From Macrostomum hystrix (lineage: Eukaryota; Animalia; Platyhelminthes), in the NCBI GenBank assembly GCA_950097015.1, contig CATNEN010000024.1, forward strand, positions 6,572,001-6,636,000: a stretch of DNA of 64,000 nucleotides, given 5' to 3'. The first letter of the stretch is position 1. Each line of letters opens with the position of its first letter. Positions 1 through 64,000 of this stretch are shown here, one piece after another. The translations under genes and the position numbers were made by a program. The notes beneath the pieces are model-generated. The model made no database searches. It was not told the DNA's origin and saw only the letters and a list, made by a program, of their open reading frames with translations.

Positions 1-790
1 GGGATCTGGGATCACCTGGGATCTGAAATCAGCTGGGGATCTGGGATCAGCTGGGGATCTGGGATCAGCTGGGGATCTGGGATCAGCTGGGGATCTGGGA
101 TCAGCTGGGGATCTGGAATCAGCTGGGGATCTGGAATCATCTGGGGATCTGGGATCAGCTGGGGATCTGGGATCAGCTGGGGATACGAGATCAGCTGGGG
201 ATCTGAGATCAGCTGGAGATCTGGAATCAGCTGGGGATCTGGGATCAGCTGGGGATCTGGGATCAGCTGGGGATCTGTGATCAGGTGGGGATCTGGGATC
301 AGCTGGGGATCTGGGATCACCTGGGATCTGAAATCAGCTGGGGATCTGGGATCAGCTGGGGATCTGGGATAAGGTGGGATCTGGAATCAGCTGGGGATCT
401 GAGATCAGGTGGGGATCTGGGATCAGCTGGGGATCTGGGATCACCTGGGGATCTGGGATCAGCTGGGGATACGAGATCAGCTGGGGATCTGGAATCAGGT
501 GGGGATCAGGGATCAGCTGGGATCTGAGATCAGCTGGGGATCTGGAATCAGCTGGGGATCTGGAATCAGCTGGGGATCTGGGATCAGCTGGTGATCTGAG
601 ATCAGGTGGGGATCTGGAATCAGGTGGGGATCTGGGATCAGCTGGGATCTGAGATCAGCTGGGGATCTGGAATCAGGTGGGGATCTGGGATCAGCTGGGG
701 ATCTGGGATCAGCTGGGGATCTGTGATCAGCTGGGGATCTGTGATCAGGTGGGGATCTGGGATCAGCTGGGGATCTGGGATCAGGTGGGA
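1..790. repeat. Minisatellite, 19-20 bp unit GGGATCAGCTGGGGATCTG (variants with CAGGTG/CACCTG), in a TMEM104 intron; runs off the window
   Basis: Periodic sequence read directly; lies just past the minus-strand donor at ~843. Confidence 0.95.
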
Positions 791-843
791 TGCTCAAACC
801 TCGGGATCTGCGGAAGGCTGTAAACTAAATGTAAGTCTCTGAC

Positions 844-4671: not shown

Positions 4672-7600
4672 ATGGTGCCGCTGCCGCTGCTGCTGCTGCT
4701 GCTGTCAGCTGCCTGCCTGTCAGCTGGAGTTTCAGGCGCGCCAAGCTTGTCGGACTCCGTGCAGCCGTTCTACGATGCCACAGAGAAGTTTCTGGACTTT
4801 ATTCAGCCAAACCAGAAGCCGGTGCTGCTCACCGATGTTCTAACTGTCGTACTCAGTGAGTGCCAACAAAAAACAACTGTGGGGTTAGCTCAAAGAGGTC
4901 GGGCCACACCGAATTGGCTATTGTTGACTAAATTGTATTGACTACATTTTTTAATATTATATTATAACATGGATTCGGCATGTTGGTTTATATACAGAAC
5001 AATGTTAGTTGTCCTTGTCACCAGGGTCTTCGACAAGAATCGTTGAATATCTTGACGATTCTGATGTCGGACAACTTTGAAAGTCAGTTCATCGTAAAGG
5101 GCGGAAAATTTAGATTCAAATGATGGACTTTTACGAAAATCGGTCATTAGTTTTTGGAGCTACTTTCGTGAAGTCGGCAGTGGGTATTTGAAATACTACC
5201 ATGCTCTACTGTTAAAACACTTGAAAGTATCAGTTTGTATTTGCATTTTCAGATGACAGTTCAAAGGCAAACAGCAGCCGCGTGTTCAGCGACTGGAAAG
5301 CTGTGAGTATAGCCTTGTGCTCAACTGAACTGCTCTGCGGGGTAAACGGACAGGAAGTGAGAAAGTTTTTGGAAAGTGGAACACCAGACAGTTGTTAACC
5401 GACCAGCCGGATGTGAATTTTGGGGTAAAAGAGCCGCATTTAATAGCATGCCATGGTCCCAAAAAACCGACCCCATCCCTGTAGTGATCTGCAATATCGA
5501 TTTGTATTTTAAAGGACCCGACCAATTTTCTGCACGGTTCCAAGAACTATGAAATTGATCTGCCTCCGCTTCGAAAACAATATAAAACAACCTATAATTG
5601 ATGTCTCACCAAAAAAATCACTTCAAATCTCTGTCTCTACATCTATCACCTGTCTCATCATCCATCACCTGTCTCATCATCCATCACCTGTCTCATCATC
5701 CATCACCTGTCTCATCATCCATCACCTGTCTCATCATCCATCTCCTGTCTCATCATCCATCACCTGTCTCTTCATCCATCACCTGTCTCATCATCCATCA
5801 CCTGTCTCATCATCCATCACCTGTCTCATCATCCATCACCTATCTCTACATCCATCACCTGTCTTATCATCCATCACCTGTCTCTTCATCCATCACCTGT
5901 CTCTACATCGTTCTCCTGTCTCATCATCCATCACCTGTCTCAGCATCCATCACCTGTCTCATCATCCATCACCTGTCTCTTCATCCATCACCTGTCTCAT
6001 CATCCATCTCCTGTCTCATCATCCATCACCTGTCTCAGCATCCATCTCCTGTCTCATCATCCATCACCTGTCTCATCATCCATCTCCTGTCTCATCATCC
6101 ATCACCTGTCTCAGCATCCATCTCCTGTCTCATCATCCATCACTTGTCTCTACATCCATCACCTGTCTCTACACCCATCACCTGTCTCTACATCCATCAC
6201 CTATCTCTACATCCATCACCTGTCTCATCATCCATCACCTGTCTCATCATCCATCTCCTGTCTCATCACCCATCACCTGTCTCATCATCCATCACCTGTC
6301 TCAGCATCCATCACCTGTCTCATCATCCATCTCCTGTCTCAGCATCCATCACCTGTCTCATCATCCATCACCTGTCTCATCATCCATCTCCTGTCTCATC
6401 ATCCATCACCTGTCTCATCATCCATCTCCTGTCTCATCATCCATCACCTGTCTCATCATCCATCTCCTGTCTCTACATCCATCACCTGTCTCATCATCCA
6501 TCTCCTGTCTCTGCATCCATCTCCTGTCTCATCATCCATCTCCTGTCTCATCATCCATCACCTGTCTCTACTTCCATCACCTGTCTCATCATCCATCTCC
6601 TGTCTCATCATCCATCACCTGTCTTATCATCCATCTCCTGTCTCATCATCCATCACCTGTCTCATCATCCATCACCTGTCTCATCATCCATCTCCTGTCT
6701 CAGCATCCATCACCTGTCTCATCATCCATCTCCTGTCTCTACTTCCATCACCTGTCTCATCATCCATCTCCTGTCTCATCATCCATCACCTGTCTTATCA
6801 TCCATCTCCTGTCTCATCATCCATCACCTGTCTCATCATCCATCACCTGTCTCATCATCCATCTCCTGTCTCAGCATCCATCACCTGTCTCATCATCCAT
6901 CTCCTGTCTCTACATCCATCACCTGTCTCATCAACCATCACCTGTCTCATCATCCATCACCTGTCTCATCATCCATCACCTGTCTCATCATCCATCACCT
7001 GTCTCATCATCCATCACCTGTCTCAGCATCCATCACCTGTCTCAGCATCCATCACCTGTCTCTATATTCATCTAATGTCTCATCATCCATCACCTGTCTC
7101 ATCATCCATCTCCTGTCTCTACATCCATCACCTGTCTCATCATCCATCTCCTGTCTCAGCATCCATCTCCTGTCTCATCATCCATCTCCTGTCTCATCAT
7201 CCATCTCCTGTCTCTACTTCCATCACCTGTCTCATCATCCATCTCCTGTCTCATCATCCATCACCTGTCTTATCATCCATCTCCTGTCTCATCATCCATC
7301 ACCTGTCTCATCATCCATCTCCTGTCTCATCATCCATCTCCTGTCTCATCATCCATCACCTGTCTCATCATCCATCACCTGTCTCAGCATCCATCACCTG
7401 TCTCAGCATCCATCACCTGTCTCTATATTCATCTAATGTCTCATCATCCATCACCTGTCTCATCATCCATCTCCTGTCTCTACATCCATCACCTGTCTCA
7501 TCATCCATCTCCTGTCTCAGCATCCATCACCTGTCTCATCATCCATCTCCTGTCTCTACTTCCATCACCTGTCTCATCATCCATCACCTGTCTCATCATC

Positions 7601-10600
7601 CATCACCTGTCTCTGCATCCATCTCCTGTCTCATCATCCATCACCTGTCTCAGCATCCATCACCTGTCTCATCATCCATCTCCTGTCTCTGCATCCATCT
7701 CCTGTCTCTATATTCATCTAATGTCTCATCATCCATCACCTGTCTCATCATCCATCTCCTGTCTCTATATTCATCTAATGTCTCATCATCCATCACCTGT
7801 CTCATCATCCAACACCTGTCTCATCATCCATCACCTGTCTCAGCATCCATCACCTGTCTCAGCATCCATCACCTGTCTCATCATCCATCACCTGTCTATT
7901 TGCAGCAGCCATCACACAGCTCACTGCCCTCAATGCCCTTTCTGAAATTGCGCAGGTGGTAAGCCGGTACTGGCAGAACATGATGGGCTACTTTATCCTC
8001 ACCTGCATCGGTGTCGCAATCTTCTTCCTGGTGCCGCTGTCCGGCCTAATCACCTGCTGCTGCCGCTGCTGCTGCCACAGGTGCGGCGGCCGAGGTCGCC
8101 TGATGGAGAAGCGAGGATCCGACTGGCGCAGAGTGTTCTACGGAGTACTGCTCCTTGTGCTCATCACGGCCATGGTGTAAGTACCCAGTTACTCCCTTTC
8201 CATCACTGGCCCCAACTGGCAGATGCCGGCAAGACTGACAGATGCCGGCAAGACTGGCAGATGCTCAGTCTTGTCAGACTGAGGTTTAGGTTGAAGGACC
8301 TTCGTTCAATTGGTCATGCTAAGATTTCAGTTGGTCAGACCGAGATTTCAATTGGTCAGACTGAGATTTCAACTGGTCAGACTGAGATTTCAGTTGGTCA
8401 GACTGAGATTTCAATTGGTCAGACTGAGATTTCAATTGGTCAGACTGAGATTTCAGTTGGTCAGACCGAGATTTCAATTGGTCAGACTGAGATTTCAACT
8501 GGTCAGACTGAGATTTCAGTTGGTCAGACTGAGATTTCAGTTGGTCAGACTGAGATTTCAATTGGTCAGACTGAGATTTCAGTTGGTCAGACTGAGATTT
8601 CAATTGGTCAGACTGAGATTTTAATTGGTCAGACTGAGATTTCAGTTGGTCAGACCGAGATTTCAATTGGTCAGACTGAGATTTCAACTGGTCAGACTGA
8701 GATTTCAGTTGGTCAGACTGAGATTTCAATTGGTCAGACTGAGATTTCAGTTGGTCAGACTGAGATTTCAGTTGGTCAGACCGAGATTTCAATTGGTCAG
8801 ACTGAGATTTCAATTGGTCAGACTGAGATTTCAACTTGTCAGTCTGAGATTTCAGTTGGTCAGACTGAGATTTCAGTTGGTCAGACTGAGAATTCAGTTG
8901 GTCAGACTGAGATTTCAATTGGTCTGACTGAGATTTCAATTGGTCAGACTGAGATTTCAACTTGTCAGACAGAGATTTCAACTGGTCAGACTGAGATTTC
9001 AATTGGTCAGACTGAGATTTCAACTTGTCAGACTGAGATTTCAATTGGTCAGACTGAGATTTCAGTTGGTCAGACTGAGATTTCAATTGGTCTGACTGAG
9101 ATTTCAACTGGTCAGACTGAGATTTCAACTTGTCAGACAGAGATTTCAGTTGGTCAGACTGAGATTTCAGTTGGTCAGACTGAGATTTCAGTTGGTCAGA
9201 CTGAGATTTCAATTGGTCTGACTGAGATTTCAACTGGTCAGACTGAGATTTCAGTTGGTCAGACTGAGATTTCAGTTGGTCAGACTGAGATTTCAGTTGG
9301 TCAGACTGAGATTTCAGTTGGTCAGTCTGAGATTTCAACTTGTCAGACTGAGATTTCAGTTGGTCAGACTGAGATTTCAATTGGTCTGACTGAGATTTCA
9401 ATTGGTCAGACTGAGATTTCAATTGGTCTGACTGAGATTTCAACTTGTCAGACTGAGATTTCAATTGGTCTGACTGAGATTTCAATTGGTCAGACTGAGA
9501 TTTCAATTGGTCAGACTGAGATTTCAGTTGGTCAGACTGAGATTTCAACTGGTCAGACTGAGATTTCAGTTGGTCAGACTGAGATTTCAATTGGTCTGAC
9601 TGAGATTTCAACTGGTCAGACTGAGATTTCAACTTTTCAGTCTGAGATTTCAGTTGGTCAGACTGAGATTTCAACTTGTCAGACTGAGATTTCAATTGGT
9701 CTGACTGAGATTTCAACTTGTCAGACCGAGATTTCAATTCGTCAGACTGAGATTTCAATTGGTCAGACTGAGATTTCAATTGGTCAGACTGAGATTTCAG
9801 TTGGTCTGACTGAGATTTCAGTTGGTCAGACTGAGATTTCAGTTGGTCTGACTGAGATTTCAGTTGGTCAGACTGAGATTTCAATTGGTCAGACTGAGAT
9901 TTCAGTTGGTCAGACTGAGATTTCAATTGGTCAGACTGAGATTTCAATTGGTCAGACTGAGATTTCAGTTGGTCAGACTGAGATTTCAGTTGGTCAGACT
10001 GAGATTTCAATTGGTCAGACTGAGATTTCAATTGGTCAGACTGAGATTTCAATTGGTCTGACTGAGATTTCAATTGGTCTGACTGAGATTTCAATTGGTC
10101 AGACTGAGATTTCAACTTGTCAGACAGAGATTTCAACTGGTCAGACTGAGATTTCAATTGGTCAGACTGAGATTTCAACTTGTCAGACTGAGATTTCAAT
10201 TGGTCAGACTGAGATTTCAGTTGGTCAGACTGAGATTTCAATTGGTCTGACTGAGATTTCAACTGGTCAGACTGAGATTTCAACTTGTCAGACAGAGATT
10301 TCAGTTGGTCAGACTGAGATTTCAGTTGGTCAGACTGAGATTTCAGTTGGTCAGACTGAGATTTCAATTGGTCTGACTGAGATTTCAACTGGTCAGACTG
10401 AGATTTCAGTTGGTCAGACTGAGATTTCAGTTGGTCAGACTGAGATTTCAGTTGGTCAGACTGAGATTTCAGTTGGTCAGTCTGAGATTTCAACTTGTCA
10501 GACTGAGATTTCAGTTGGTCAGACTGAGATTTCAATTGGTCTGACTGAGATTTCAATTGGTCAGACTGAGATTTCAATTGGTCTGACTGAGATTTCAACT

Positions 10601-13600
10601 TGTCAGACTGAGATTTCAATTGGTCTGACTGAGATTTCAATTGGTCAGACTGAGATTTCAATTGGTCAGACTGAGATTTCAGTTGGTCAGACTGAGATTT
10701 CAACTGGTCAGACTGAGATTTCAGTTGGTCAGACTGAGATTTCAATTGGTCTGACTGAGATTTCAACTGGTCAGACTGAGATTTCAACTTTTCAGTCTGA
10801 GATTTCAGTTGGTCAGACTGAGATTTCAACTTGTCAGACTGAGATTTCAATTGGTCTGACTGAGATTTCAACTTGTCAGACCGAGATTTCAATTCGTCAG
10901 ACTGAGATTTCAATTGGTCAGACTGAGATTTCAATTGGTCAGACTGAGATTTCAGTTGGTCTGACTGAGATTTCAGTTGGTCAGACTGAGATTTCAGTTG
11001 GTCTGACTGAGATTTCAGTTGGTCAGACTGAGATTTCAATTGGTCAGACTGAGATTTCAGTTGGTCAGACTGAGATTTCAATTGGTCAGACTGAGATTTC
11101 AATTGGTCAGACTGAGATTTCAGTTGGTCAGACTGAGATTTCAGTTGGTCAGACTGAGATTTCAATTGGTCAGACTGAGATTTCAATTGGTCAGACTGAG
11201 ATTTCAATTGGTCTGACTGAGATTTCAATTGGTCAGACTGAGATTTCAGTTGGTCAGACTGAGATTTCAACTGGTCAGACTGAGATTTCAATTGGTCTGA
11301 CTGAGATTTCAATTGGTCAGACTGAGATTTCAGTTGGTCAGACTGAGATTTCAGTTGGTCTGACTGAGATTTCAGTTGGTCAGACTGAGATTTCAATTGG
11401 TCTGACTGAGATTTCAACTGGTCAGACTGAGATTTCAACTTGTCAGACTGAGATTTCAATTGGTCTGACTGAGATTTCAACTGGTCAGACTGAGATTTCA
11501 ACTTGTCAGTCTGAGATTTCAGTTGGTCAGACTGAGATTTCAGTTGGTCAGACTATTTCTAGGGACATCAGCAGCTGGGTTCTTGTGCTGTTGTCGGTGA
11601 GTATTGTTGCAACTACAACTAAAAGCACAGTTGATCTAATCTGGCAACAGTTTCCGGTTGACAAGTAGAGCTTTGCAAGCAATGCTGTTGCCAAATTTGC
11701 AAAGCAAATCTCGCTATCTGCTAAAGAGTAAACTAAACAAAAACTTTATTGGCAGCTGTTGCTCTGTGGAGCCAAATTTCACAATCCGAAATGACACAAC
11801 AGAAGTGTTAAAATTTTAAATGCCAAAATGCAAAATGCTAAATCTACCATTGCGCGGCGCTTCTACAGGCTGCTGGAGGTTGCATGCTAGATGCTGGAGG
11901 TTGCATGCTAGATGCTGGAGGTTGCATGCTAGATGCTGGAGGTTGCATGCTAGATGCTGGAGGTTGCATGCTAGATGCTGGAGGTTGCATGCTAGATGCT
12001 GGAGGTTGCATGCTAGATGCTGGAGGTTGCATGCAGATGCTGGAGGTTGCATGCTAGATGCTGGAGGTTGCATGCTAGATGCTGGAGGTTGCATGCTAGA
12101 CAATGGAGGTTGCATGCTAGACAATGGAGGTTGCATGCTAGACAATGGAGGTTGCATGCTAGACAATGGAGGTTGCATGCTAGACAATGGAGGTTGCATG
12201 CTAGACAATGGAGGTTGCATGCTAGATGCTGGAGGTTGCATGCTAGATGCTGGAGGTTGCATGCTAGATGCTGGAGGTTGCATGCTAGATGCTGGAGGTT
12301 GCATGCTAGATGCTGGAGGTTGCATGCTAGATGCTGGAGGTTGCATGCTAGATGCTGGAGGTTGCATGCTAGATGCTGGAGGTTGCATGATAGATGCTGG
12401 AGGTTGCATGCTAGATGCTGGAGGTTGCATGCTAGACAATGGAGGTTGCATGCAGATGCCTTGAACTGAGTTGAGCTGTCAGGCACCAGAAAGTTATTGA
12501 ATGCTTGAAGTCACGTGACACGAATGCTTTTATTTCAGGCTTGGCGTTGTGCTGGCCTTCATCTCCAACCAGCTGGTCCGCGAGCAGATGGACCCGGACA
12601 GTGGCCGTCCGACCATGCTGGCCAATTTCAGCTCGGACATGTCCGACGTTGCGAAAATGCTGACGATGATCCCGCTGCGTGCCAAGAACAACAGCTTCTC
12701 GGCGGTTGTCTCACTGATTGCGGCCATCTATCCGGCGTTGAACATCTCGATGATGAATCTGCGGAACACGCTTGGCAGCAGCAGCAAGGCTGACACAGTC
12801 TTAGCCGATGCTGTGCAAGCTATTCGGCATCTGAGCCAGGCGCATAGCTACTCCGAGAGCTACCTGGCCAACTACGCAAATTACTCGGCCCAATTGGACA
12901 ACCTGAACCGGCTGCTGGCTGACCTCAGGACCAACTTGACCGGCATCAACTCCGACTGTCCATTCAATGCCATCCAGTCCGACTGCAACCTGATTGCCAA
13001 CCGGCTGTTGGGACTGCGAGTGTCCCAGAATGCGACAAGGACTGGACTGGCCAACATTACCCAGCTCAACAGCCTCATGAGATCTGTCAATGACACTGAT
13101 CTCATGCAGAAGCTCATGACTGCTCAGCAGGCTCACAACAATATCACCAATGTTGCCCTGGGTTATGTAGGTTGAGCTGCTTCGTGAATGAGACTGCTGG
13201 ATCTCTAGTCGGGGGGAGATGAGATTTCTAGGTTATGAAGACGGGATCTCTAGGTTATGGAGATGGGATCTCTAGGTAGGGGGATGGGATCTTTAGGTAA
13301 TGGATATGGGATCTCTAGGTAATAGAGATGGGATATCTAGGTAATAGAGATTGGATCTCTAGGTAATAGAGATTGGATCTCTAGTAAGGGGGATGGGATC
13401 TCTAGGTTGGGAGATGGGATCTCTATGTAATAGAGAAGGGATCTCTAGGTAATAGAGATAGTGTTACGTTTGAGGAACACGAAGGCACTTGGGTTTGTGA
13501 ATTTCAGAAGAGCGTTATTAGAGCAGCTCCAAGTTGGCATGAGCCTAAAGCTCACTGTTATATTTCTTTACCCTTAAGGGGCATTGAAGCTTCTAGCAAA

Positions 13601-16600
13601 CAAGATGTACAGTAGCATTTTGCCTCAATGGCACATAGACTACTTTTAGACGAGAATAAGTCTATAAATAAATCAGCATAGCATGCAGCATATGCAACAC
13701 CCCCACCGATGCTGAAAAACGTCAGTAACCCAAACGATCAGGGGGTCGATGTTGGCGAGAACTCCGCCTCAGTTCTTGCGCCGTTTCCGTAGCTTGATTA
13801 GCCGTGACATCGGTAGTTTTTTCCTCCGAGACGGGTTTTTGATTCTGGTCGGAATCAGATCCGTCAGTCACGTCATGAAGCTTTGGTATAATATCCGATT
13901 GATGTACCAGCCGACCCTTGTCGTCACGAAAGGTATTGGTTCCGACGGAAGTAGTAATCATTGACGGAACCCTCTCTTCCTTGTGTTCCACACGAATGAA
14001 GACTGGTTCGGCTTGTAGTCGAGGTTGAATCCAGTCAGTGCACACTCTTGACAAGCGAGTTCTTGGCAGTTGAAGAAACACCAAACCAGCAGGAATAGAA
14101 CCATTGCATTGCGGTGTAGTATTGTGAAACAGACAGAACGCGATTGCAATTCGCTCTAGTTCAGCCGCGTCAGAAGTAGCGTTTGACTTCTTTAGATGAA
14201 ATTTAAACTCTTCTATTATCCGCTCCACTTGCCCATTCGACTGATGGTGACCTGGAGGAGTCAGAAGGTGCTGAACGAAGTTCTCCTTTAGGAACGTGGC
14301 GAATTCGGCGGACGTGAAATTTGTACCGTGGAGTGAAGCACGTGTCTCTCATAGTGAAGCAATGTTTTGGGCTTAAAATGTGCGGTTAGCGAATTCTGGA
14401 TATCATCGAACGTTACTTCCTCCTTCGTGATGTCTTTTGGCTTTGCAAGCTCTTCTATCAGTGTGAAGGCTGCGTCTCCGCATGTCGCTAGAAGTACTGC
14501 TTTGGAGTGAGCTTGCTTCCCTGAAGCCACCAGGTAAAACTGCAGTCTTTTGAAATACTGCTCGATCTCGGGATAAGAAAGAGGCAGTTCTCCAAGTCTA
14601 AAATCCAACGGCTGAGTCATCACTCCTGCGAACGTAAGGTAGTCAGTACACAGCTTCTTCAGTGAATCCAGTGGTTTTTCCTCGTCGCCATGTTACGTTT
14701 GAGGAACACGAAGGCACTTGGGTTTGTGAATTTCAGAAGAGCGTTATTAGAGCAGCTCCAAGTTGGCATGAGCCTAAAGCTCACTGTTATATTTCTTTAC
14801 CCTTAAGGGGCATTGAAGCTTCTAGCAAACAAGATGTACAGTAGCATTTTGCCTCAATGGCACATAGACTACTTTTAGACGAGAATAAGTCTATAAATAA
14901 ATCAGCATAGCATGCAGCATATGCAACAGATAGGATCTCTAGGTAGCAGAGATGGGATCTCTAGGTAGGGGATGGGATCTCTAGGTAGGGAGATGGGATC
15001 TCTAGATAATGTAGATCTCTAGGTAATTGACATGGGATCTATAGGTAGGAGGAGATAAGATCTCTTGGTTGTGATATCTATCAATATGGGGAGATAGGAC
15101 CCAGCAAGCTTAAAGATAAGATCTAAAAAGCATGTGCCATTTGATCCAATTCAGGTGCTAAACTTTGCCAATCAAGTTCAAAGTTCGTTAAACAGCAGTG
15201 CGGAACTTGATTTGATCTGGTTCAACGTGGAGCGTCTATTTAGCAGCCTGAGCTCATTCATAACGAACTCCAGTTACAATGTCAACAGCACCGTGACGGA
15301 TCCCATCACTAGGCAGTTTGCCACACTGGACGAGGCGGCATCAAACATCGATCTGGTGCGCTACTCCGTGTTCATTGTTATCGCCAGTCTCGGCTCCCTC
15401 GTAGTACTTCTATGGTACTTCGGCGTCGCCTACGGACTGTGCGGCGAGCCGCCGTACGAAGATTCGCGCTGCTGCAACAGGGGAGTCGGCGCCAGACTGC
15501 TCAGCGCCGGCCTGGTGATCGGATTCGTCAGCTACGCGCTGCTGTTCGCCGTCATTCTGGGACTGTTTCTGGCGGGAGGACTCGCTGGTGAGGACTGGGG
15601 TTGTGGACTCAGGTGAGGGCTGTGGACTCAGGTGAGGGCTGTGGACTCAGGTGAGGGCTGTGGACTCAGGTGAGGGCTGTGGACTCAGGTGAGGGCTGTG
15701 GACTCAGGTGAGGGCTGTGGACTCAGGTGAGGGCTGTGGACTCAGGTGAGGGCTGTGGACTCAGGTGAGGGCTGTGGACTCAGGTGAGGGCTGTGGACTC
15801 AGGTGAGGGCTGTGGACTCAGGTGAGGGCTGTGGACTCAGGTGAGGGCTGTGGACTCAGGTGAGGGCTGTGGACTCAGGTGAGGGCTGTGGACTCAGGTG
15901 AGGGCTGTGGACTCAGGTGAGGGCTGTGGACTCAGGTGAGGGCTGTGGACTCAGGTGAGGGCTGTGGACTCAGGTGAGGGCTGTGGACTCAGGTGAGGGC
16001 TGTGGACTCAGGTGAGGGCTGTGGACTCAGGTGAGGGCTGTGGACTCAGGTGAGGGCTGTGGACTCAGGTGAGGGCTGTGGACTCAGGTGAGGGCTGTGG
16101 ACTCAGGTGAGGGCTGTGGACTCAGGTGAGGGCTGTGGACTCAGGTGAGAAGTGAGGATTGTAAATTTACAGGTGAATGAGTGATGGCTGTGGGCTCACA
16201 ATTGAGGGTTAGGGTCTCACTTGCGACAAATGAATGTTTTGAACTCACAGGTGAGGAATGGAGAGAGTTGGGGACTCACAGGTGAATATCATGAGTGGGG
16301 TGAGGGCCTCCATTAGGCAGCACAGGTTAGAGGGGATCGATGACTCTCCGCATCTCACCTGACCCCTCACAGAAACGGAGGTGTGCCGCTACCTGACTGG
16401 GCGCAAAGGTGCCGAGGGCTACAATGAGCTGGACTCCAGCCTAAACCAGATCATGCGCGCCACATCGCCAGACCTGAACAGCTACTCGCTCAATCTCGTC
16501 AGCGGCCTGCTAGACGGTTGCGGCAGCGGCAACGCGTCTGTCACTGCGGCGCTGAACATCCAGAGCCTTGTACAGGGCAGCTACATCCAGACGCGCGTTG

Positions 16601-18268: not shown

Positions 18269-18285
18269 GACCAAGATTTCTTCGC

Positions 18286-19095
18286 TTTCTAGTGGGTCAT
18301 AGAGCTCTGTTTCTAGTGGGTCATAGAGCTCTGTTTTTAGTGGGTCATAGAGCTCTGTTTCTAGTGGGTCATAGATCTCTGTTTCTAGTGGGTCATAGAG
18401 CTCTGTTTTAGTGGGTCATAGAGCTCTGTTTCTAGTGGGTCATAGAGCTCTGTTTCTAGTGGGTCATAGAGCTCTGTTTCTAGTGGGTCATAGAGTTCTG
18501 TTTCTAGTGGGTCATAGAGCTCTGTTTCTAGTGGGTCATAGAGCTCTGTTTCTAGTGGGTCATAGAGCTCTGTTTCTAGTGGGTCATAGAGCTTTGTTTC
18601 TAGTGGGTCATAGAGCTCTGTTTCTAGTGGGTCATAGAGTTCTGTTTCTAGTGGGTCATAGAGTTCTGTTTCTAGCGGGTCATAGAGCTCTGTTTCTAGC
18701 GGGTCATAGAGCTTTGTTTCTAGTGGGTCATAGAGCTCTGTTTCTAGTGGGTCATAGAGTTCTGTTTCTAGTGGGTCATAGAGCTCTGTTTCTAGTGGGT
18801 CATAGAGCTTTGTTTCTAGTGGGTCATAGAGCTCTGTTTCTAGTGGGTCATAGAGCTCTGTTTCTAGTGGGTCATAGAGCTCTGTTTCTAGTGGGTCACG
18901 GAGGTCTGCTTTTAGTGGGTCATAGAGCTCTGTTTCTAGTGGGTCATAGAGTTCTGCTTTTAGTGGGTCATAGAGCTCTGTTTCTAGCGGGTCATAGAGT
19001 TCTAATTCTTCTTGGTGATAGAGTCCTGTTTCTACTGGGTCATGCAGGTCTGCTTTTAGTGGGTGATGGAGGTCAGTTTTTTGGTCATAGAGTTC
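18286..19095. repeat. Minisatellite, 24 bp CTAGTGGGTCATAGAGCTCTGTTT, ~33 copies, immediately after the last traced prominin exon
   Basis: Direct reading. Confidence 0.96.
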
Positions 19096-33260: not shown

Positions 33261-33358
<98 letters not shown>

Positions 33359-38822: not shown

Positions 38823-39104
38823 ATATTACATGTTTGTACATGTTTGTACATGTCCTAGACTGCTAGGAACATCGTGAGCCGGCTTTAGTCTACTAGTAAG
38901 CAAAGAAATGAAACAAAAATATTAAGCCTATCGTAAATGCTGCAAATATGCAGTTGTGTTGCACTGTAGTTTACGGAGAATGAAGTGTGACAAAAGCACA
39001 GTACTCGTGAATGCATGATAAATGTGTCCAAATATGATGTATTCCAAGGCAGAAAGAAGAGAAATAAAAAATAAGGGCAATCAGGATTCGGAGAATAGTT
39101 ATCT

Positions 39105-49100: not shown

Positions 49101-51834
49101 CCATCCAATCCTTGGTGTCTAACAGGTTTCCCATCCAATCCTTGGTGACTAACAGGTTTCCCATCCAATCCTTGGTGACTAACAGGTTTCCCATCCAATC
49201 CTTGGTGACTAACAGGTTTCCCATCCAGTCAATGGTGTCTAACAGGTTTCCCATCCAATCCTTGGTGACTAACAGGTTTCCCATCCAATCCTTGGTGACT
49301 AACAGGTTTCCCATCCAGTCAATGGTGTCTAACAGGTTTCCCATCCAATCCTTGGTGTCTAACAGGTTTCCCATCCAATCCTTGGTGACTAACAGGTTTC
49401 CCATCCAATCCTTGGTGTCTAACAGGTTTCCCATCCAATCAATGGTGTCCAACAGGTTCCCCATCCAATCAATGGTGTCTAACAGGTTTCCCATCCAATC
49501 AATGGTGTCCAACAGGTTTTCCATCCAATCCTTGGTGACTAACAGGTTTCCCATCCAGTCAATGGTGTCTAACAGGTTTCCCATCCAATCCTTGGTGACT
49601 AACAGGTTTCCCATCTAATCCTTGGTGACTAACAGGTTTCCCATCCAATCCTTGGTGACTAACAGGTTTCCCATCCAATCCTTGGTGACTAACAGGTTTC
49701 CCATCTAATCCTTGGTGACTAACAGGTTTCCCATCCAGTCAATGGTGACTAACAGGTTTCCCATCCAATCCTTGGTGACTAACAGGTTTCCCATCCAATC
49801 CTTGGTGACTAACAGGTTTCCCATCCAATCCTTGGTGACTAACAGGTTTCCCATCCAATCCTTGGTGACTAACAGGTTTCCCATCCAATCCTTGGTGACT
49901 AACAGGTTTCCCATCCAGTCAATGGTGACTAACAGGTTCCCATCCAATCCTTGGTGACTAACAGGTTTCCCATCCAATCCTTTGTGACTAACAGGTTTCC
50001 CATCCAGTCCTTTGTGACTAACAGGTTTCCCATCCAATCCTTTGTGACTAACAGGTTTCCCATCCAATCCTTGGTGACTAACAGGTTTCCCATCTAATCC
50101 TTTGTGACTAACAGGTTTCCCATCCAGTCCTTGGTGACTAACAGGTTTCCCATCCAATCCTTGGTGACTAACAGGTTTCCCATCCAGTCCTTTGTGACTA
50201 ACAGGTTTCCCATCCAGTCAATGGTGACTAACAGGTTTCCCATCCAATCCTTGGTGACTAAAAGGTTTCCTATCTTATCATTGGTGTCTAACAGGTTTCC
50301 CATCAACCCCTGATGCGGGGTGAGGCCTCACATTCCAGTCCAGCGAGGTGACGTCCTTGTTGCTGGGCACGTCCATTCCGCCGCGGCTGATGCAGTGTCG
50401 CAGGATCATTCGCTTGCTGGGATCGCCGGAGGCAACGGCGGCCAAATCGTTGGCGTCCCAGAGGCGAGCGGTGGAGTCGCCGCTGCCAGACGCCAGGAGG
50501 TCCTGGCGCGGATTCCATGCGCAGATGAACACCTCGGATTCGTGGCCTCGCAGCAGGGTGACGCGCTGTTGCGGAATGTCGAGAAATTCGCTACCGAGTT
50601 CGAATTGGCTGCTGGCAGCGTCGCCGCCCTGAGCAGCCTCCGGACGGTGGTGACTGTTGTTGGTGGCAGCGCTTCCGCTGCTGTTGCCATTGTTGCTACT
50701 GCTATTATTGTTGTTATTGTTGCTGTAGGAAGTCCCACCGCCATTGGTCTGGGGCGGCTGCGACTGCTGCTGCTGATCGGAGCTCGGCTCGGCCTGGCGT
50801 GTCAGCAGGTTTCGAAAATGTTCGAAATAGGGTCAATGCACTGGGGAAGTGTGGAGAAAGATGAAGGGAGAGTGGAGAAGGGGGTTGAAGAATTGGGAGA
50901 GTGAAGAAGGAAGAGTGGAGAATTGGGAGAGAGTGGAGAAGGGGAGTGGAGAATTGGGAGAGAGTGGAGAAGGGGAGTGGAGAATTGGGAGAGTGGAGAA
51001 GGGGAGTGGAGAATTGGGAGAGAGTGGAGAAGGGGAGTGGAGAATTGGGAGAGAGTGGAGAAGGGGAGTGGAGAAGGGGAGTGGAGAATTGGGAGAGTGG
51101 AGAATTGGGAGAGAGTGGAGAAAGGGGATGGAGAATTATGAAAGAGCGGAGAAGGGAGAAGCGAAAGTGGAAAAGGGATACTTAATAACGCAGTAAAGTG
51201 GAGGAGGGAGAGTAGAGAACGGGGGGGGAAGTTAAGAAAGAGGATTCGAGAAGGGAAAGAAGAGACTGGAGAGGGGAGAAACGAAAGTAAAGAAGAGAGA
51301 AAAGAAAGGAGGAGCGTGAAAGTAGAAGCAAGAGTGGATTGGCAATGGGAGAGAGGTGCAGTAATTAGTAAAGTTTCGATTGATGTACAACAAAGGCATA
51401 CAATAAAAGCGCACCTTAAGTCGTCTGCTCCTCTCGGTCTCCAGCAGCTGTTTCTTGCGCATCTCGACCACCTCGGGCATGACTGAGTCGATTAGCGACA
51501 AAGACTCGACAACTCGCTCGCCGCCGTCCTCGCCAATGCTAATCTCAGCCTCGGTGTATTGCAGGCCCTTCTGGATGATCTGCAGCAGTGCGGCCGGGGG
51601 CACCATAGCGCCATTGATGTTTGTGCTGGAGATGTGGCTCTCCATGCCGAACATGTAGGCCGAGTGCAGATAGCCTGCGCGAGTAGGCGGGATGGCGGAT
51701 ATATGTGGTGGGGACCAATCTAGGGCAGTGGATTATCACCCTGAATAATCATCATAAAGATGTTGAGAAAGCTTACCAGACTCTTGCAGATATCGATAGA
51801 TGAGAAAGTTGACCTCATCACTGCTGAAGCTCAT
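43152..51834 (-). CDS. TBL1XR1: Transducin beta-like 1 (TBL1X/TBL1XR1, ebi) LisH/WD40 corepressor. Exons approx. 51834-51777, 51674-51415, ~50795-50332, 46605-46542, 46448-46351, 46186-46126, 44912-44582, 44245-44080, 43990-43889, 43184-43152
   Basis: [20 protein letters not shown]; [35 protein letters not shown]; [28 protein letters not shown]; [14 protein letters not shown]; APALDVDWQ; [13 protein letters not shown]; [11 protein letters not shown]; [11 protein letters not shown]; final exon [14 protein letters not shown] junctions phase-consistent. Confidence 0.96.
43252..43850. repeat. Minisatellite, 31 bp GACACCTGTTAACTACCTTGGGTCTGGCCCT, ~19 copies, last TBL1 intron
   Basis: Direct reading; intron 43185-43888. 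Confidence 0.97.
44362..44507. repeat. Minisatellite, 24 bp GAGTAGCTAAAATGACCGGCTCTT, ~6 copies, TBL1 intron
   Basis: Direct reading. Confidence 0.92.
45005..46038. repeat. Minisatellite, 22 bp CACCTGAATC(T/C)AACCTACCTGT, ~47 copies, TBL1 intron
   Basis: Direct reading; intron 44913-46125. Confidence 0.97.
46650..50302. repeat. Minisatellite, 30 bp GGTGACTAACAGGTTTCCCATCCAATCCTT, ~122 copies with two interspersed variants, TBL1 intron
   Basis: Direct reading; fills ~3650 of the 3726-bp intron 46606-50331. Confidence 0.97.
50855..51135. repeat. Purine-rich GAGAGTGGAGAA(GGG/TTGG) tandem repeat, TBL1 intron
   Basis: Direct reading. Confidence 0.88.
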
Positions 51835-56226: not shown

Positions 56227-59200
56227 TCATTTCCGTTCAGTTGATACTTGCGAGCTGGAGTCGTAGGAGCCGGGACGGGTTTTCAGTAGGGCGTCAGACT
56301 GGCGAAGCAGCTGGTCCACCCTGTAAAAGTTGGGATAAATTGTGCGCATTTTCTTTTCATATTTTCAGCATACGCTCCCGTCCTGATTCTTTGGAATAGA
56401 CATAGAATCCATTGATTAAAACATGCCATTTCAGTCAGTCGGATTCGGGTTTGGGACTCTTGGATTCGGGTTTGGGATTCTTAGATTCGGGTTTGGGACT
56501 CTTGGATTCGGGTTTGGGATTCTTGGATTCGGGTTTGCGAATCTTGGATTCGAGTTTGGGATTCTTAGATTCGGGTTTGGGACTCTTGGATTCGGGTTTT
56601 GGACTCTTAGATTCGGGTTTGGGACTCTTAGATTCGGGTTTGGGATTCTTGGATTCGGTTTGGGACTCTTGGATTCGGGTTTTGGACTCTTAGATTCGGG
56701 TTTGGGACTCTTGGATTCGGTTTGGGATTCTTGGATTCGGTTTGGGATTCTTGGATTCGGTTTGGGACTCTTGGATTCGGGTTTGGGACTCTTAGATTCG
56801 GTTTGTGATTCTTGGATTCGGTTTGGGACTCTTGGATTCGGGTTTGGGATTCTTGGATTCGGTTTGGGATTCTTGGATTCGGGTTTGGGACTCTTGGATT
56901 CGGGTTTTGGACTCTTAGATTCGGGTTTGGGACTCTTAGATTCGGGTTTGGGATTCTTGGATTCGGTTTGGGACTCTTAGATTCGGTTTGGGACTCTTGG
57001 ATTCGGGTTTGGGATTCTTAGATTCGGGTTTGGGATTCTTGGATTCGGTTTGGGATTCTTGGATTCGGTTTGGGACTCTTGGATTCGGGTTTGGGACTCT
57101 TAGATTCGGGTTTGGGATTCTTGGATTCGGTTTGGGATTCTTGGATTCGGTTTGGGACTCTTGGATTCGGGTTTGGGACTCTTAGATTCGGGTTTGGGAT
57201 TCTTGGATTCGGTTTGGGACTCTTGGATTCGGGTTTGGGATTCTTAGATTCGGGTTTGGGATTCTTGGATTCGGTTTGGGATTCTTGGATTCGGTTTGGG
57301 ACTCTTGGATTCGGGTTTGGGACTCTTGGATTCGGGTTTGGGATTCTTGGATTCGGTTTGGGATTCTTGGATTCGGTTTGGGATTCTTGGATTCGGGTTT
57401 GGGATTCTTGGATTCGGTTTGGGATTCTTGGATTCGGGTTTGGGATTCTTGGATTCGGGTTTGGGATTCTTGGATTCGGGTTCGGAATTCTTGGATTCGG
57501 GTTTGGGATTCAGTCGGAATAAAATAGTGCACACAACAAAAAAGGAGACTAAACATCAGCATTTGGCACCAGAAATTGGCTACCAGAAATTTTGCTTCTC
57601 TAAATTGCAATAGTAAAGTTGAACAACATAGCTTGTAAAATAGAGAAAAAAACTAAATTGAAAAATAAATAGAGAGTAGATTAGGTCAGTTGTTTTCCTG
57701 ATCCGAAAGGCCTAATCATTAATTGTATGGGATGATGATCTAAGAAATAGGACGATAACGATAATAGACAAGCAGATTGGCTAGTTAATTAGATAGGTGC
57801 CCACATTTCAGGTAGATGAATAGTAATGTAGCTTTCAATAACATGAATTCAAGTAGAAAATAACTATTAGTACATTAGGGAACATTAGTACTACATTTCT
57901 AATAATAAAAAAAATAATCACGACACACATGCAGATTTTAAGTGGTATTAGCTGAAATTTAGTCACACCTACTAGGCTAGGCCATTGGATTTTAGGCATA
58001 GCTGACGCCACTGAAACAATTGTTGTGTGCGCGAGTGCATTACACAGCTGCAAGTTTACTACCCGAATCAGAATTCAAATCCATTCAATTCAATCCATTC
58101 AAATACCACCATGTTTCATAAATCAACCAATCAAGACCATTGAAATATCGCCAGGTCTCATAAATCAACCAATCAAGACCACTCAAATATCGCCAGGTCT
58201 CATAAATCAACCAATCAAGACCACTCAAATATCGCCAGGTCTCATAAATCAACCAATCAAGACCATTGAAATACCGCCAGGTCTCATAAATCAACCGATA
58301 AAGACCACTCAAATATCGCCAGGTCTCATAAATCAACCGATAAAGACCATTCAAATATCGCCAGGTCTCATAAATCAACCGATAAAGACCATTCAAATAT
58401 CGCCAGGTCTCATAAATCAACCGATAAAGACCATTCAAATATCGCCAGGTCTCATAAATCAACCGATAAAGACCATTCAAATATCGCCAGGTCTCATAAA
58501 TCAACCAATCAAGACCACTCAAATATCGCCAGGTCTCATAAATCAACCAATCAAGACCACTCAAATATCGCCAGGTCTCAGAAATCAACCAATCAAGACC
58601 ATTGAAATACCGCCAGGTCTCATAAATCAACCAATCAAGACCATTGAAATACCGCCAGGTCTCATAAATCAACCGATAAAGACCACTCAAATATCGCCAG
58701 GTCTCATAAATCAACCGATAAAGACCATTCAAATATCGCCAGGTCTCATAAATCAACCGATAAAGACCACTCAAATATCGCCAGGTCTCATAAATCAACC
58801 GATAAAGACCATTCAAATATCGCCAGGTCTCATAAATCAACCGATAAAGACCATTCAAATATCGCCAGGTCTCATAAATCAACCGATAAAGACCATTCAA
58901 ATATCGCCAGGTCTCATAAATCAACCGATAAAGACCATTCAAATATCGCCAGGTCTCATAAATCAACCGATAAAGACCATTCAAATATCGCCAGGTCTCA
59001 TAAATCAACCGATAAAGACCACTCAAATATCGCCAGGTCTCATAAATCAACCGATAAAGACCACTCAAATATCGCCAGGTCTCATAAATCAACCGATAAA
59101 GACCATTGAAATATCGCCAGGTCTCATAAATCAACCGATAAAGACCATTCAAATATCGCCAGGTCTCATAAATCAACCGATAAAGACCATTCAAATATCG

Positions 59201-62200
59201 CCAGGTCTCATAAATCAACCGATAAAGACCACTCAAATATCGCCAGGTCTCATAAATCAACCGATAAAGACCATTCAAATATCGCCAGGTCTCATAAATC
59301 AACGGATAAAGACCATTCAAATATCGCCAGGTCTCATAAATCAACCGATAAAGACCATTCAAATATCGCCAGGTCTCATAAATCAACCGATAAAGACCAT
59401 TGAAATATCGCCAGGTCTCATAAATCAACCGATAAAGACCACTCAAATACCACCAGGTCTCATAAATCAACCAATCAAGACCATTCAAATATCGCCAGGT
59501 CTAATAAATCAACCAATAAAGACCACTCAAATATCGCCAGGTCTCATAAATCAACCAATCAAGACCATTCAAATATCGCCAGGTCTCATAAATCAACGGA
59601 TAAAGACCACTCAAATACCACCAGGTCTAATAAATCAACCAATCAAGACCATTGAAATATCGCCAGGTCTCAGAAATCAACCAATCAAGACCATTCAAAT
59701 ATCGCCAGGTCTCATAAATCAACCGATAAAGACCACTCAAATACCACCAGGTCTCATAAATCAACCAATCAAGACCATTGAAATATCGCCAGGTCTCAGA
59801 AATCAACCAATCAAGACCATTCAAATACCGCCAGGTCTCATAAATCAACCAATCATGACCATGGTTGAGTATGGTAAATACATTACAATATCCAAACAGC
59901 AATGCCCCTTCTCAATCTCACCTCTCATCCTGATCGCCGGAGCTATCGTCACTGAGCAAATCGTCATCGTCAGAGTCCTGGCCGTCCTGCAGCATCGCCT
60001 GGAGGTCGGCTATTCGCTTCTTGGCCGCCTTCAGCTCGGACTCGAGTCCTGATTTCTCTTCGTCGGCGGTCTCGAATCTCTGGCTGAGGTCGCTGCGCTT
60101 CCGTTCGCTGTCAGCCAGGCGCTCCTCCAGGTCCGTGGCGTCGTCCTTCAAGTCGCGCAGCTGCTTGGTTAGTCGGCGAGTTTTCTCTTTCTCGGCCAGC
60201 TCGGAGGCCTGGAGACTGTCGCGCTCCTCAAGGGTGCGCTCGCTCTGCTCTTTGAGTCGGTCCACCTTTTGGGGGAATATATTTCGAATGGGATTCGTTA
60301 ACTGACGTTGCACAGTTGGAGACGAAGCAGAAGGTAAAAACGTAATTGAGTTTAAGGAAAAAGGTAAGAAGAAGAGAGAGAAGAGAGGGGGAGGCAAGAA
60401 GGTGAGAATAAAGGTGAGGGCGATACAGCGAGAATAAAGGCGAGGGCGATACAGCGAGAATAAAGGCGAGGGCGATACAATGGGAATAAAGGCGAGGGCG
60501 ATACAGCGAGAATAAAGGCTACGGAAATACAGCGAGAATAAAGGCTACGGAAATACAGCGAGAATAAAGGCGAGGGCGATACAATGGGAATAAAATGGAG
60601 ACTGTGAAGGCGACTATAAAGCTAGGCGAATGTGTGTTGGCGAGCATAAAGGCGAGTGTGTGAAGGCGAGAATTTAAGCTAGAGCGAGAAGAAAATAGTT
60701 CATGGCGAGAAGTAAAGTGGAAGAGCTTAAATGCGAACGAAAAGTATATTATTTCTCACTAGACGACAAATGGAAAGTCAAATAGAAGGAGGTTGAAAAA
60801 ATAAACAAATAAACTACTGCAAGTAGTTTGCTATAAAGAATTATTGAATAGGTTGACCAAGAGGACCCACCTGATTGGACAGCCGAGTCCTCGCCGTGAC
60901 CTCCAGGTCCAGCTTGGATTCCAGCTCCCTGATGCGGGTCTCGTATTTGGCCACAACGGCCCGGTCGACGGTGTCAGACTCGGCGCTGGCCAGACGAGCG
61001 TCTAGCTCCGCTGCCCGCTGCTTCAGCTGGTCCCGTTCTGCCAGCAGGGCTTCAATCTCGCTGGCCTGGCTCTGCACGGTGCGCTGGTCGGCCTCCAGTC
61101 GGCTGGCTGTAGCCTTGCACTTACGCAACAGGTCGCTGACTTCGTCTTCCAGCTCCTCCTTGTGGGCGCTCAGCTCGCGATTGGCCCGGTTGGCGGCGGC
61201 CAGCTTCTCGTCCTGCTCGGCTCTGCTGCGCTGAGCCTCGTCCAGTGTGGCCTGCGAGATGGGGCGAGTGAGTTGACAGGTACACAACGATGGATAACAA
61301 GCAATAACCAATAGCAACAAATGATGCAATAAAGACTCCAACTAGACTATTTACAGAGTCGCGTGCAACGATAGACAGTCAATCGAACTGTAACAGAAGC
61401 GTTTCAAGCAACGCGTTTTCTACAGTTGGTCAATCGGACAGGTAGGCAATAGGACAGGTGGACAAGTGGACAGTCGGACCGGTGGGCAATCGGACCTTCG
61501 GACAGGTGGTCAGGAGGACAATGGGACAGGTGGACAATGGGACAGGTGGACAATGGGCCAGGCGGACAATGGGACAGGAGGACAATGGGCCAGGCGGACA
61601 ATGGGACAGGTGGACAATGGGCCAGGCGGAAAATGGGACAGGTGGACAATGGGACAGGAGGACAGTGGGACAGGTGGACAATGGGACAGGTGGACAATGG
61701 GCCAGGCGGACAATGGGACAGGTGGTCAATGGGACAGGTGGACAATGGGACAGGAGGACAGTGGGACAGGTGGACAATGGGACAGGTGGACAATGGGACA
61801 GGTGGACAATAGGACAGGTGGAGAGTGGGACAGGTGGACAATGGGACAGGTGGACAATGGGACAGGTGGAGAGTTGGTTATAGAGACAAATTCAGACCTG
61901 CAGCTCCTCCAGGTCGGCCTCGGCGGAGCGGCGGCCCCTGAGCGCCAGGTCCCTAGCCGCCTCAGCGTCCTCCAGCTGTTCCCGCAGCTGCTTGATGAGG
62001 CCGCTTTGATCGCCAGCCCGACGGACCTGTTCCAGTTCGGCCTGAGTGTCCTTCAGCACCGCACGCAGTCGCTTCAACTCCTTGCGCTGGCGGCGGCGCT
62101 CGGCGTCGGCGCGCGGACCTCCGGACGCATCGGCGCCGGTCTGATCCCGGGCCAGCAGCTCGGCAAGCTGGCGCTCGGCTTCGCGTTTCTCCCTGGCCAG

Positions 62201-64000
62201 CCGCTGCCGCTCCTGCTGCTCCTCCTCCAGCTGCTCCTCCAGGTTGCGCAGGCGACGCTGCTGTGCGTAGCGCTGGTTGTCCAGCTCGGCGTCCCGCTCT
62301 TCGGCTTCGCGGGCCATCTGGGGGACGGACAAATTGGTAGAGAAAAATATTGCTGCGATACACCCGACCCTGATCAGAGAAATCTGTAGAAAATTTTTTC
62401 AGCATCAAGCCCAGAGAGCAGACGTTTATTACTCTTAAACACTCACAAGGCCTACCAGTCCTATAGAAAACTTATAGATCTAAATTCATCGATCTCTAGA
62501 CAATCTACCAGATCTAGATAATCAATCTCTAGACTTTCTACCATTCTAGATAAATCAATCTCTAGACTATCTACCAGATCTAGATAAACCAATCTCTAGA
62601 CTATCTACCAGATCTAGATAATCAATCTCTAGACTTTCTACCATTCTAGATAAATCAATCTCTAGACTTCTCGCTCGGCAAAGATCCCATGTCAGTTGAC
62701 CCACCAGTTGTCGCAGCCGCTCTGCCTCCATCTCAATCCTGGATTTATCCTGCTCAGCCGCGTCCAGCTGAGCGGCCAGCTCCTCGACTTCCTCCTCCAG
62801 AGTCGCCACCTTCTGCTCAAGATCGGCCCGGGCTCTCTTGAGCCGGCCAACTTCGAATTCGCTCTCGGAGGCGGAGCCGCCACCGGTCAGCAAGCCGCCG
62901 GGGCCGCCGGTGAGATCGGCCAGCTGATCCTGCAGCCGCTGCGATCGCTCCTGGGCGCTGGCCGCCGAGGCCTTGGCGTCTTGCAGCTCGCGCTCCAGGC
63001 GCCACTTGTCGCCAAGCAGTTCATCGCGAGATCGTTGAAGCGTTTCGCGCGACTCCAGCTGATCCGAGAGGTCCTGGACAAGGGGATAAGAGCAATGCGA
63101 AAAATTAGTGCTAATGGGTAGTCATTGTGGACAGTACAGCAGATTATTACCCGCACGACTTATTTATATAAGTCCGTTTTGATCCAAACTTTTAGTTGAG
63201 TTAACAATGACCCCCAAAATCTTGTAGTTATTCTTTGACCCACTGCTGATACTGTACAGTTTATCCTTGACCTACTGCTGATTTTGAACAGTTTATCCTT
63301 GACCCACTGATTCTGTACAGTTTATTCTTGACCCACAGCTGATTCTGTACAGTTTATCCTTGACCTACTGCTGATTCTGTACAGTTTATCCTTGACCCAC
63401 TGCTGATTCTGTACAGTTATCCTTGACCTACTGCTGATACTGTACAGTTTATCCTTGACCCACTGATTCTGTACAGTTTATATTTGACCCACTGCTGATA
63501 CTGTACAGTTTATCCTTGACCCACTGATTCTGTACAGTTTATATTTGACCCACTGCTGATACTGTACAGTTTATCCTTGACCCACTGATTCTGTACAGTT
63601 TATATTTGACCCACTGCTGATACTGTACAGTTTATCCTTGACCCACTGATTCTGTACAGTTTATATTTGACCCACTGCTGATACTGTACAGTTTATCCTT
63701 GACCCACTGATTCTGTACAGTTATCCTCAAATTATGGGTTGTCCCTTGAATGATCTCACTGTTTGAATAGTTTCGGATCTTATCGATTTTATTACCTTAT
63801 TGAGCCTGGCCAGCTCCGTGTCGTGCCGCTTCTGTCGCTTCTCCAAATCCGCCTTCCTATCCAGCGCGTCCTCTAGTTGAGCTCGCAAATCCGAGGTCTC
63901 CTGCTGGGATTTCGTAGCGCGCCGCTTCGAGCCGGCCAGCTCTTCGATGAGATCGTCGCGCTCAACGGTGACGGACTGCAGGCGAGACTCGATAGCCTTG
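56227..64000 (-). CDS. MYO18A: Unconventional myosin-XVIII coiled-coil tail, partial. Exons approx. >64000-63796, 63073-62705, 62317-61898, 61251-60871, 60265-59922, 56320-56227
   Basis: KADLEKRQKRHDTEL; EAELDNQRYAQQRRLRNLEEQLEEEQQERQRLAREKRE; ALRGRRSAEADLEELQ; TVDRAVVAKYETRIRELESKLDLEV; KRIADLQAML..DSDDD, matching MYO18 tail motifs as I recall them. Last exon is assigned by phase only. Confidence 0.88.
56440..57510. repeat. Minisatellite, 20-21 bp GGATTCG(G)GTTTGGGA(C/T)TCTT, ~51 copies, last MYO18 intron
   Basis: Direct reading. Confidence 0.96.
58085..59858. repeat. Minisatellite, 42 bp CCAGGTCTCATAAATCAACCGATAAAGACCATTCAAATATCG, ~42 copies, last MYO18 intron
   Basis: Direct reading; explains the 675-aa and 467-aa ORFs. 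Confidence 0.97.
60403..60595. repeat. Minisatellite, 26 bp GCGAGAATAAAGGCGAGGGCGATACA, ~7 copies, MYO18 intron
   Basis: Direct reading. Confidence 0.9.
61433..61871. repeat. Minisatellite, 16 bp GGGACAGGTGGACAAT, ~27 copies, MYO18 intron
   Basis: Direct reading. Confidence 0.94.
62478..62668. repeat. Minisatellite, ~33 bp TCTAGATAAATCAATCTCTAGACTATCTACCA, ~6 copies, MYO18 intron
   Basis: Direct reading. Confidence 0.9.
63232..63727. repeat. Minisatellite, alternating 32/29 bp GACCCACTG(CTG)AT(A/T)CTGTACAGTTTAT(CC/AT)TT, ~16 copies, MYO18 intron
   Basis: Direct reading. Confidence 0.94.

What the first reader, a model, noticed from the sequence alone, without database searches (positions are those of the whole stretch)
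1..64000. One intron, one private minisatellite: introns inflated by locally born tandem arrays
Seen: about 30 arrays cover roughly 29 kb (~45%). About 25 lie inside traced introns: all 5 MYO18 introns, 5 of 9 TBL1 introns, 4 of 7 internal prominin introns plus the stretch after its last traced exon, and many alpha2delta introns. Units differ from intron to intron. Arrays often fill the intron almost to the splice sites, e.g. ~3650 of 3726 bp at 46606-50331, ~1030 of 1213 bp at 44913-46125 and ~600 of 704 bp at 43185-43888. That leaves about 75-200 bp, like array-free introns (66, 86, 89, 93, 102 bp). No array was seen disrupting a coding exon. Inference: intron length here is set mainly by in-situ minisatellite birth and expansion rather than TE insertion. 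This points to a genome-wide mutational system, or a use of arrays as intron spacers, timers or protein-loading sites. I do not know whether it has been described at this per-intron level.
Basis: partly seen in the sequence, partly recalled or inferred. Interest (0 to 1): 0.85.

Follow-up and report, generated by a model that had tools for sequence, protein, structure and literature searches.

The report
Repeat arrays set flatworm intron length
In Macrostomum flatworms an intron is either tiny or swollen by its own short tandem repeat, which appears, stretches and vanishes independently in each species, so this looks like a mutational habit of the genome and not a built-in timer or spacer.

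Summary
Confirmed. The window is from a Macrostomum flatworm other than M. lignano. 33 arrays cover 45.6% of it and 70% of intron DNA, with none in traced exons apart from the coding histone H1 tail repeat. Array length explains 94% of intron-length variance; 22 of 25 introns over 300 bp carry one. M. lignano shows the same architecture (20 of 21).

Duplicate M. lignano loci keep the same unit and flanks but differ by up to tenfold in array length. Orthologous introns between the species have unrelated units, and array presence is uncorrelated (Fisher p=1). That supports local birth and neutral turnover, argues against intron-specific timers, and excludes an assembly artefact. Transposons add little.

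Two corrections. The non-array remainder is often above 200 bp (median 197). Units are not fully private: CAGGT is in 11 of 29 units (about 2 expected), and a 13-bp core noted elsewhere in this genome recurs on the sense strand in two arrays here and one in M. lignano.

Tandem-repeat richness of Macrostomum is published in bulk; I found no per-intron description. The scan noted this pattern in many other windows of this genome.

The parts
1..789 (-). 18-bp x 44 array in the TMEM104 intron (donor at 843); carries the recurring 13-bp core on the sense strand
5631..7897 (+). 19-bp x 119, prominin intron 5303-7905
8305..11554 (+). 21-bp x 155 with a roughly 50-unit block duplicated, prominin intron 8177-12538
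11871..12459 (+). second, unrelated 21-bp x 28 array in the same intron
13214..15069 (+). 22-bp array split by a young LTR element, prominin intron 13171-15154
15598..16149 (+). 19-bp x 29 near-identical donor-like units starting 10 bp after the donor; decayed copies follow
16878..17628 (+). 20-bp x 37, prominin intron 16839-17694
18286..19079 (+). 24-bp x 33, prominin intron 18265-19255
19467..20861 (+). 32-bp x 44, 3' of the last traced prominin exon
22989..23525 (-). 18-bp x 30, last alpha2delta intron (618 bp, remainder 81)
24191..27449 (-). 30-bp x 57 (24191-25911) and 34-bp x 30 (26429-27449), alpha2delta, either side of an uncertain micro-exon
27703..27956 (-). 24/33-bp compound array, alpha2delta, remainder about 60 bp
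30671..31115 (-). 15-bp x 26, alpha2delta intron 30612-31246
32503..32939 (-). 31-bp x 14; the orthologous M. lignano intron holds an unrelated 16-bp array
33261..34060 (-). two small arrays (4-bp at 33261-33358, 10-bp at 33996-34060) in introns that are array-free in M. lignano
37847..41469 (.). 45-bp x 22 and 23-bp x 105 arrays between the TBL1 3' end and the H1 promoter, outside traced genes
42143..42631 (-). 29-bp x 17 in the inferred TBL1 3' UTR (poly(A) signal at 41762); recurring 13-bp core, sense strand
43251..43852 (-). 31-bp x 19, TBL1 intron 43185-43888
44345..44508 (-). 24-bp x 7, TBL1 intron 44246-44581
45008..46048 (-). 22-bp x 47, TBL1 intron 44913-46125
46662..50304 (-). 30-bp x 121 filling 3643 of 3726 bp; carries the CTGTTAGAC core on the sense strand
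50868..51156 (-). 31-bp purine/pyrimidine-skewed array, TBL1 intron 50794-51414
56441..59862 (-). 21-bp x 52 and 42-bp x 42 arrays in the last intron of the MYO18-like gene
60404..63727 (-). four arrays (26, 16, 33 and 32 bp units), one in each of the other four MYO18-like introns

Best explanation
A genus-wide, mostly neutral minisatellite life cycle acting on a genome whose default intron is 65-120 bp. (1, inferred) A 15-45 bp piece of the dispensable middle of a short intron is duplicated in place by slippage or microhomology repair. (2, shown) The array then grows and shrinks by duplication and deletion of multi-unit blocks, as unequal exchange or gene conversion would give, while its ends and flanks stay fixed. 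(3, partly shown) New variant units re-expand inside old arrays and leave decayed copies at the edges, so short introns show one array rather than several. (4, shown by comparison) Over species-level time arrays are lost and replaced. (5, inferred) Exons and promoters purge them; introns and 3' regions tolerate them as long as donor and acceptor ends survive. Birth or survival is biased towards certain short motifs.
For: Intron length versus array length r=0.97. 22 duplicate M. lignano intron pairs: median array difference 225 bp, median remainder difference 4.5 bp, at 1.2-5.8% flank mismatch. Variant-repeat codes share both ends and differ by internal blocks. Orthologous introns: both species 3, M. 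lignano only 5, window only 2, neither 6, Fisher p=1, units unrelated. Remainders and mid-size 'array-free' introns hold excess repeated 7-mers. A nascent 59-bp duplication sits in a short M. lignano intron: about 1.6 copies in L007, 2.6 in L008. No intron with remainder up to 350 bp has two separate arrays (0 of 52, 6.4 expected). No shared array flanks.
Against: Motif sharing (CAGGT in 11 of 29; a sense-strand 13-bp core in two species) is not expected from blind local duplication. Units are richer in G+C (mean 0.49) than short array-free introns (0.37). No single-copy ancestor of any unit was seen, so the birth step is not shown. The one-per-intron test is inflated because adjacent related arrays are merged. 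Only five genes in one window and four M. lignano loci were studied.
Confidence: 0.7

Rival explanations
1. Motif-directed seeding. A sequence-specific process (a nicking or recombination factor recognising a core, or RNA-templated repair copying short transcript pieces) starts or amplifies many arrays, so units are variations on a small vocabulary and not copies of random local DNA.
For: CAGGT in 11 of 29 units versus 2.2 from dinucleotide shuffles and 1.5 from random window pieces, family-wise p<0.001. The core named in advance by s1-346778 occurs within one mismatch in two window arrays (p about 0.007) and one M. lignano array (p about 0.003), 3 of 3 on the sense strand, and never outside arrays. 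The core of s1-388042 occurs in the 46662 array.
Against: CAGGT is not enriched in M. lignano (3 of 44, p=0.44) and has no strand bias (4 versus 8, p=0.39). Most units carry no shared core. A third reported core is absent from arrays here. The CTGTTAGAC match alone is not significant (p=0.16). No donor element was found.
Confidence: 0.17
2. Arrays are left-overs of satellite-carrying transposons (Helitrons, MITEs, foldback elements) that inserted in introns.
For: Another scan note reports satellite-bearing Helitrons in this genome (s1-258403, unchecked). M. lignano has inverted pairs of like arrays.
Against: Self-BLAST of the array-masked window finds no shared flanks, only an LTR pair, a SINE-like piece and one inverted repeat. 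Remainders of 60-105 bp leave little room for element ends. The LTR element inserted into a pre-existing array. The mariner ends in L009 do not carry the motif.
Confidence: 0.06
3. Arrays are selected spacers, transcription timers or protein-loading sites for their introns.
For: Near-universal presence in long introns of both species; avoidance of promoters; one decayed CCAAT-box repeat sits in the same alpha2delta intron in both species.
Against: Presence, unit and length are not conserved between orthologous introns, and lengths vary up to tenfold between gene copies with near-identical or identical proteins. No strand bias in skew and no enrichment or depletion of splice-like motifs.
Confidence: 0.05
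4. Assembly artefact.
For: No reads could be examined.
Against: An independent assembly of another species shows the same architecture. Separately assembled gene copies share ordered variant units. Arrays hold up to 28 distinct variant units each.
Confidence: 0.02

Closest known systems
Classical minisatellites / VNTRs (human Jeffreys-type; own knowledge, not from a paper read here)
   Same: 10-60 bp units, interspersed variant units, block duplication, copy-number variation, G+C-rich strand-skewed units, short shared cores
   Different: Here they make up 64-70% of intron DNA in the genes studied and occur in most introns over 300 bp, instead of being scattered loci
Bulk tandem-repeat richness of Macrostomum lignano (PMC5730564: simple and tandem repeats 15% of the genome; PMC10468722 leaves repeat accounting open)
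   Same: Same genus and same class of DNA
   Different: The passages found do not relate arrays to introns, intron length or orthologous turnover. Wasik et al. 2015 could not be read and may say more.
Amphioxus 'mirages' (PMC3087553)
   Same: Locus-specific minisatellites in introns, often with splice-like signals, not disturbing splicing
   Different: Mirage units span an exon-intron boundary. Here units do not resemble their own junctions more than other junctions; only the 15598 array comes close.
Transposon-driven intron expansion (suggested, not shown, for the polyclad Prostheceraeus, PMC9469890)
   Same: Intron length inflated by repetitive DNA
   Different: Here transposons account for about 5% of intron DNA and arrays for 70%

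Membership tests
Minisatellite/VNTR | Head-to-tail units of about 10-60 bp | tested here: met
   periods 15-45 bp in the window, 11-48 in M. lignano
Minisatellite/VNTR | Variable copy number between alleles or copies | tested here: met
   M. lignano copies, e.g. 48/39/7 and 79/25 units; not testable in the window's own species
Minisatellite/VNTR | Interspersed variant units with block turnover | tested here: met
Mirage (junction-spanning minisatellite) | Unit includes the neighbouring exon-intron boundary | tested here: not met
   24 arrays scored against own and other junctions, none stands out
Transposon-borne satellite | Shared termini or flanks around arrays | tested here: not met
   masked self-BLAST; window scale only
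Transposon-borne satellite | Same unit dispersed at many loci | tested here: inconclusive
Introner / intron gain by tandem duplication | Array creates a new intron and supplies its splice sites | tested here: not met
   intron positions are shared with M. lignano and splice sites lie in unique flanks; two array-bearing M. lignano introns are absent from the window, direction untested
Functional delay introns | Conserved intron length or position of the expansion | tested here: not met
   16 orthologous introns, Fisher p=1

The most novel reading that the evidence does not exclude
Macrostomum has a sequence- or transcript-directed mechanism that seeds minisatellites inside transcribed non-coding DNA from a small set of core motifs, some strand-oriented and shared across species, and this is the main determinant of intron size in the genus.
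Probability: 0.17. Interest if true: 0.8.

Novelty: new variant of a known kind. Interest (0 to 1): 0.5.

Why it matters
It is a mode of intron-size evolution driven by locus-specific minisatellites instead of transposons. With probably many thousands of independent arrays, duplicated gene copies, several species genomes and transgenesis available, the old question of how minisatellites are born and whether shared cores drive them becomes testable at scale. Practically, it helps explain why Macrostomum genomes are hard to assemble and why library-based masking reports few tandem repeats (2-5% simple repeats, about 0% satellites in PMC10468722 supplement), and it offers abundant polymorphic markers.

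Tried and rejected
The window's H1 protein is not on record. A profile search for the full M. lignano prominin orthologue returned only a paralogue; only its first intron was reachable, through L009. Rejected: junction-derived units; splice-site origin of CAGGT, which has no sense bias; mariner-end origin; transcription-strand G/C skew (17 of 25 and 17 of 27 G-rich, weak); avoidance of cryptic splice motifs; known RNA families (none). Literature: ten searches found no per-intron description; the pipefish and Ectocarpus papers were checked and do not describe it. No contig taken for human was met.

Full report
Source. The long TMEM104 exon (window 790-2007, minus) hits M. lignano at 76% identity, with all other animals at 51% or less; histone H1 and prominin give the same answer. 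Gene order is conserved with M. lignano: TMEM104 head-to-head with prominin (L009) and H1 followed by alpha2delta (L007, L008). The window is therefore from another Macrostomum species, probably M. hystrix (inference from contig counts in PMC10468722).

Observation. TRF finds 33 arrays covering 45.6% of the window. I traced 41 complete introns in prominin, alpha2delta, TBL1 and a MYO18-like coiled-coil gene, plus the cut TMEM104 intron. Of the 40 tabulated, 23 carry arrays; 22 of 25 over 300 bp do; array-free introns have median 102 bp. Arrays are 70% of intron DNA and explain 94% of length variance. Per unique kb they are six times denser in introns than outside genes (p=5e-6), and absent from exons apart from the coding H1 tail repeat. 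Non-intronic arrays lie mostly 3' of genes; the promoter-side gaps hold only two tiny ones.

Second species. Exact spliced mapping of M. lignano proteins and anchored mapping of alpha2delta give 30 non-redundant introns: 21 with arrays, 20 of 21 over 300 bp, arrays 64% of intron DNA, median remainder 166 bp. The architecture is genus-wide and appears in an independent assembly.

Dynamics. Duplicate M. lignano loci differ by 1.2-5.8% in unique DNA. Across 22 array-bearing intron pairs the unit is kept, the remainder differs by a median 4.5 bp and the array by 225 bp, in one case 738 versus 69 bp. Array-free introns have identical lengths. Variant-unit codes share both ends and differ by internal blocks; window arrays show the same block duplications. 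This is ordinary minisatellite turnover. Between species, 16 orthologous introns show an array in both for 3, in M. lignano only for 5, in the window only for 2 and in neither for 6 (Fisher p=1). Where both have one, units are unrelated. Arrays thus outlast a few per cent divergence but not the species split. Remainders and several mid-size introns hold excess repeated 7-mers, consistent with decayed arrays; the 15598 array is a fresh homogeneous expansion inside an older decayed one. Among 52 introns with remainder up to 350 bp none has two separate arrays, against 6.4 expected. I read this as new units arising inside existing arrays and the dispensable core of a short intron being about one unit long, but merging of compound arrays inflates the statistic.

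Transposons. The array-masked window has only three repeated features. One is a 1.47-kb LTR element with identical LTRs and a 5-bp target duplication that landed inside an existing array. With a SINE-like piece, transposons give about 5% of intron DNA. No array flanks are shared.

Privacy and cores. Whole units are unrelated. But CAGGT/ACCTG occurs in 11 of 29 units against 1.5-2.2 expected, family-wise p<0.001 over all 5-mers. It has no strand bias and is not enriched in M. lignano, so it is a one-window result. Cores reported by unchecked scan notes on other windows served as tests fixed in advance. CCCAGATCCTCAG, within one mismatch, is in the arrays at 1-789 and 42143-42631 and in M. lignano L003:2087, all on the sense strand and nowhere outside arrays. 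CTGTTAGAC is in the 46662 array, not significant alone. A third core is absent from arrays. A minority of arrays therefore share a vocabulary across loci and species. This is the unexplained and most interesting residue; three cases cannot establish strand bias.

Mechanism. Best reading (0.7): local duplication in short introns (inferred), block-wise expansion and contraction (shown), re-expansion and decay (partly shown), replacement over species time (shown), purging from exons and promoters (inferred), with some motif bias. Motif-directed seeding 0.17, transposon-borne satellites 0.06, selected function 0.05, artefact 0.02.

Comparison. These are members of the minisatellite/VNTR class. They are not amphioxus-type mirages as a group (PMC3087553) and not intron-creating elements. 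Bulk tandem-repeat abundance in M. lignano is published (PMC5730564), and the M. hystrix / M. cliftonense paper leaves repeat nature unexamined. Ten literature searches found no per-intron account, with the caveat that Wasik 2015 and most subscription papers were not readable. The scan's own notes list the same pattern in many other windows of this genome; these are unchecked and not counted as support.

Verdict. Real, genus-wide, known in kind, apparently undescribed at intron level, and probably non-adaptive. Interest 0.5.

Noticed in passing
window 13462-14928: Miniature LTR retroelement, 1.47 kb, identical LTRs of about 238 bp, TG...CA ends, 5-bp target duplication, with an integrase-like and a second short ORF; very recent insertion into a minisatellite.
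   Followed up: partly
window 29551-29825 and L007:18952-19331: The same alpha2delta intron holds five CCAAT boxes mostly about 45-59 bp apart in both species: a fossil shared array or a conserved regulatory element. Alignment alone is not significant (p=0.09).
   Followed up: partly
L007:14482-16128; L001:1107-2750; L009:4531-6599: M. lignano has inverted pairs of the same array; in L007 they flank two exons and could pair in the pre-mRNA (editing or circular RNA).
   Followed up: no
window 841-1953 and 32116-32480: Two array-bearing M. lignano introns (TMEM104 codon 280; a GC-AG intron in alpha2delta) are absent in the window's species; loss or gain not polarised.
   Followed up: partly
window 28992-29287 and 34835-34935: SINE-like repeat 79-87% identical to copies in M. 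lignano L001; no Rfam match.
   Followed up: partly
window 52260-52534: Decayed 275-bp inverted repeat upstream of TBL1, MITE-like.
   Followed up: no
window 21290-21400: GC-box and CCAAT-like promoter patch between the converging 3' ends of prominin and alpha2delta; possibly an untraced small gene.
   Followed up: no
window 35946-36711: Intronless histone H1 with a coding KKAKSPAA-type tandem repeat; syntenic with M. lignano.
   Followed up: yes
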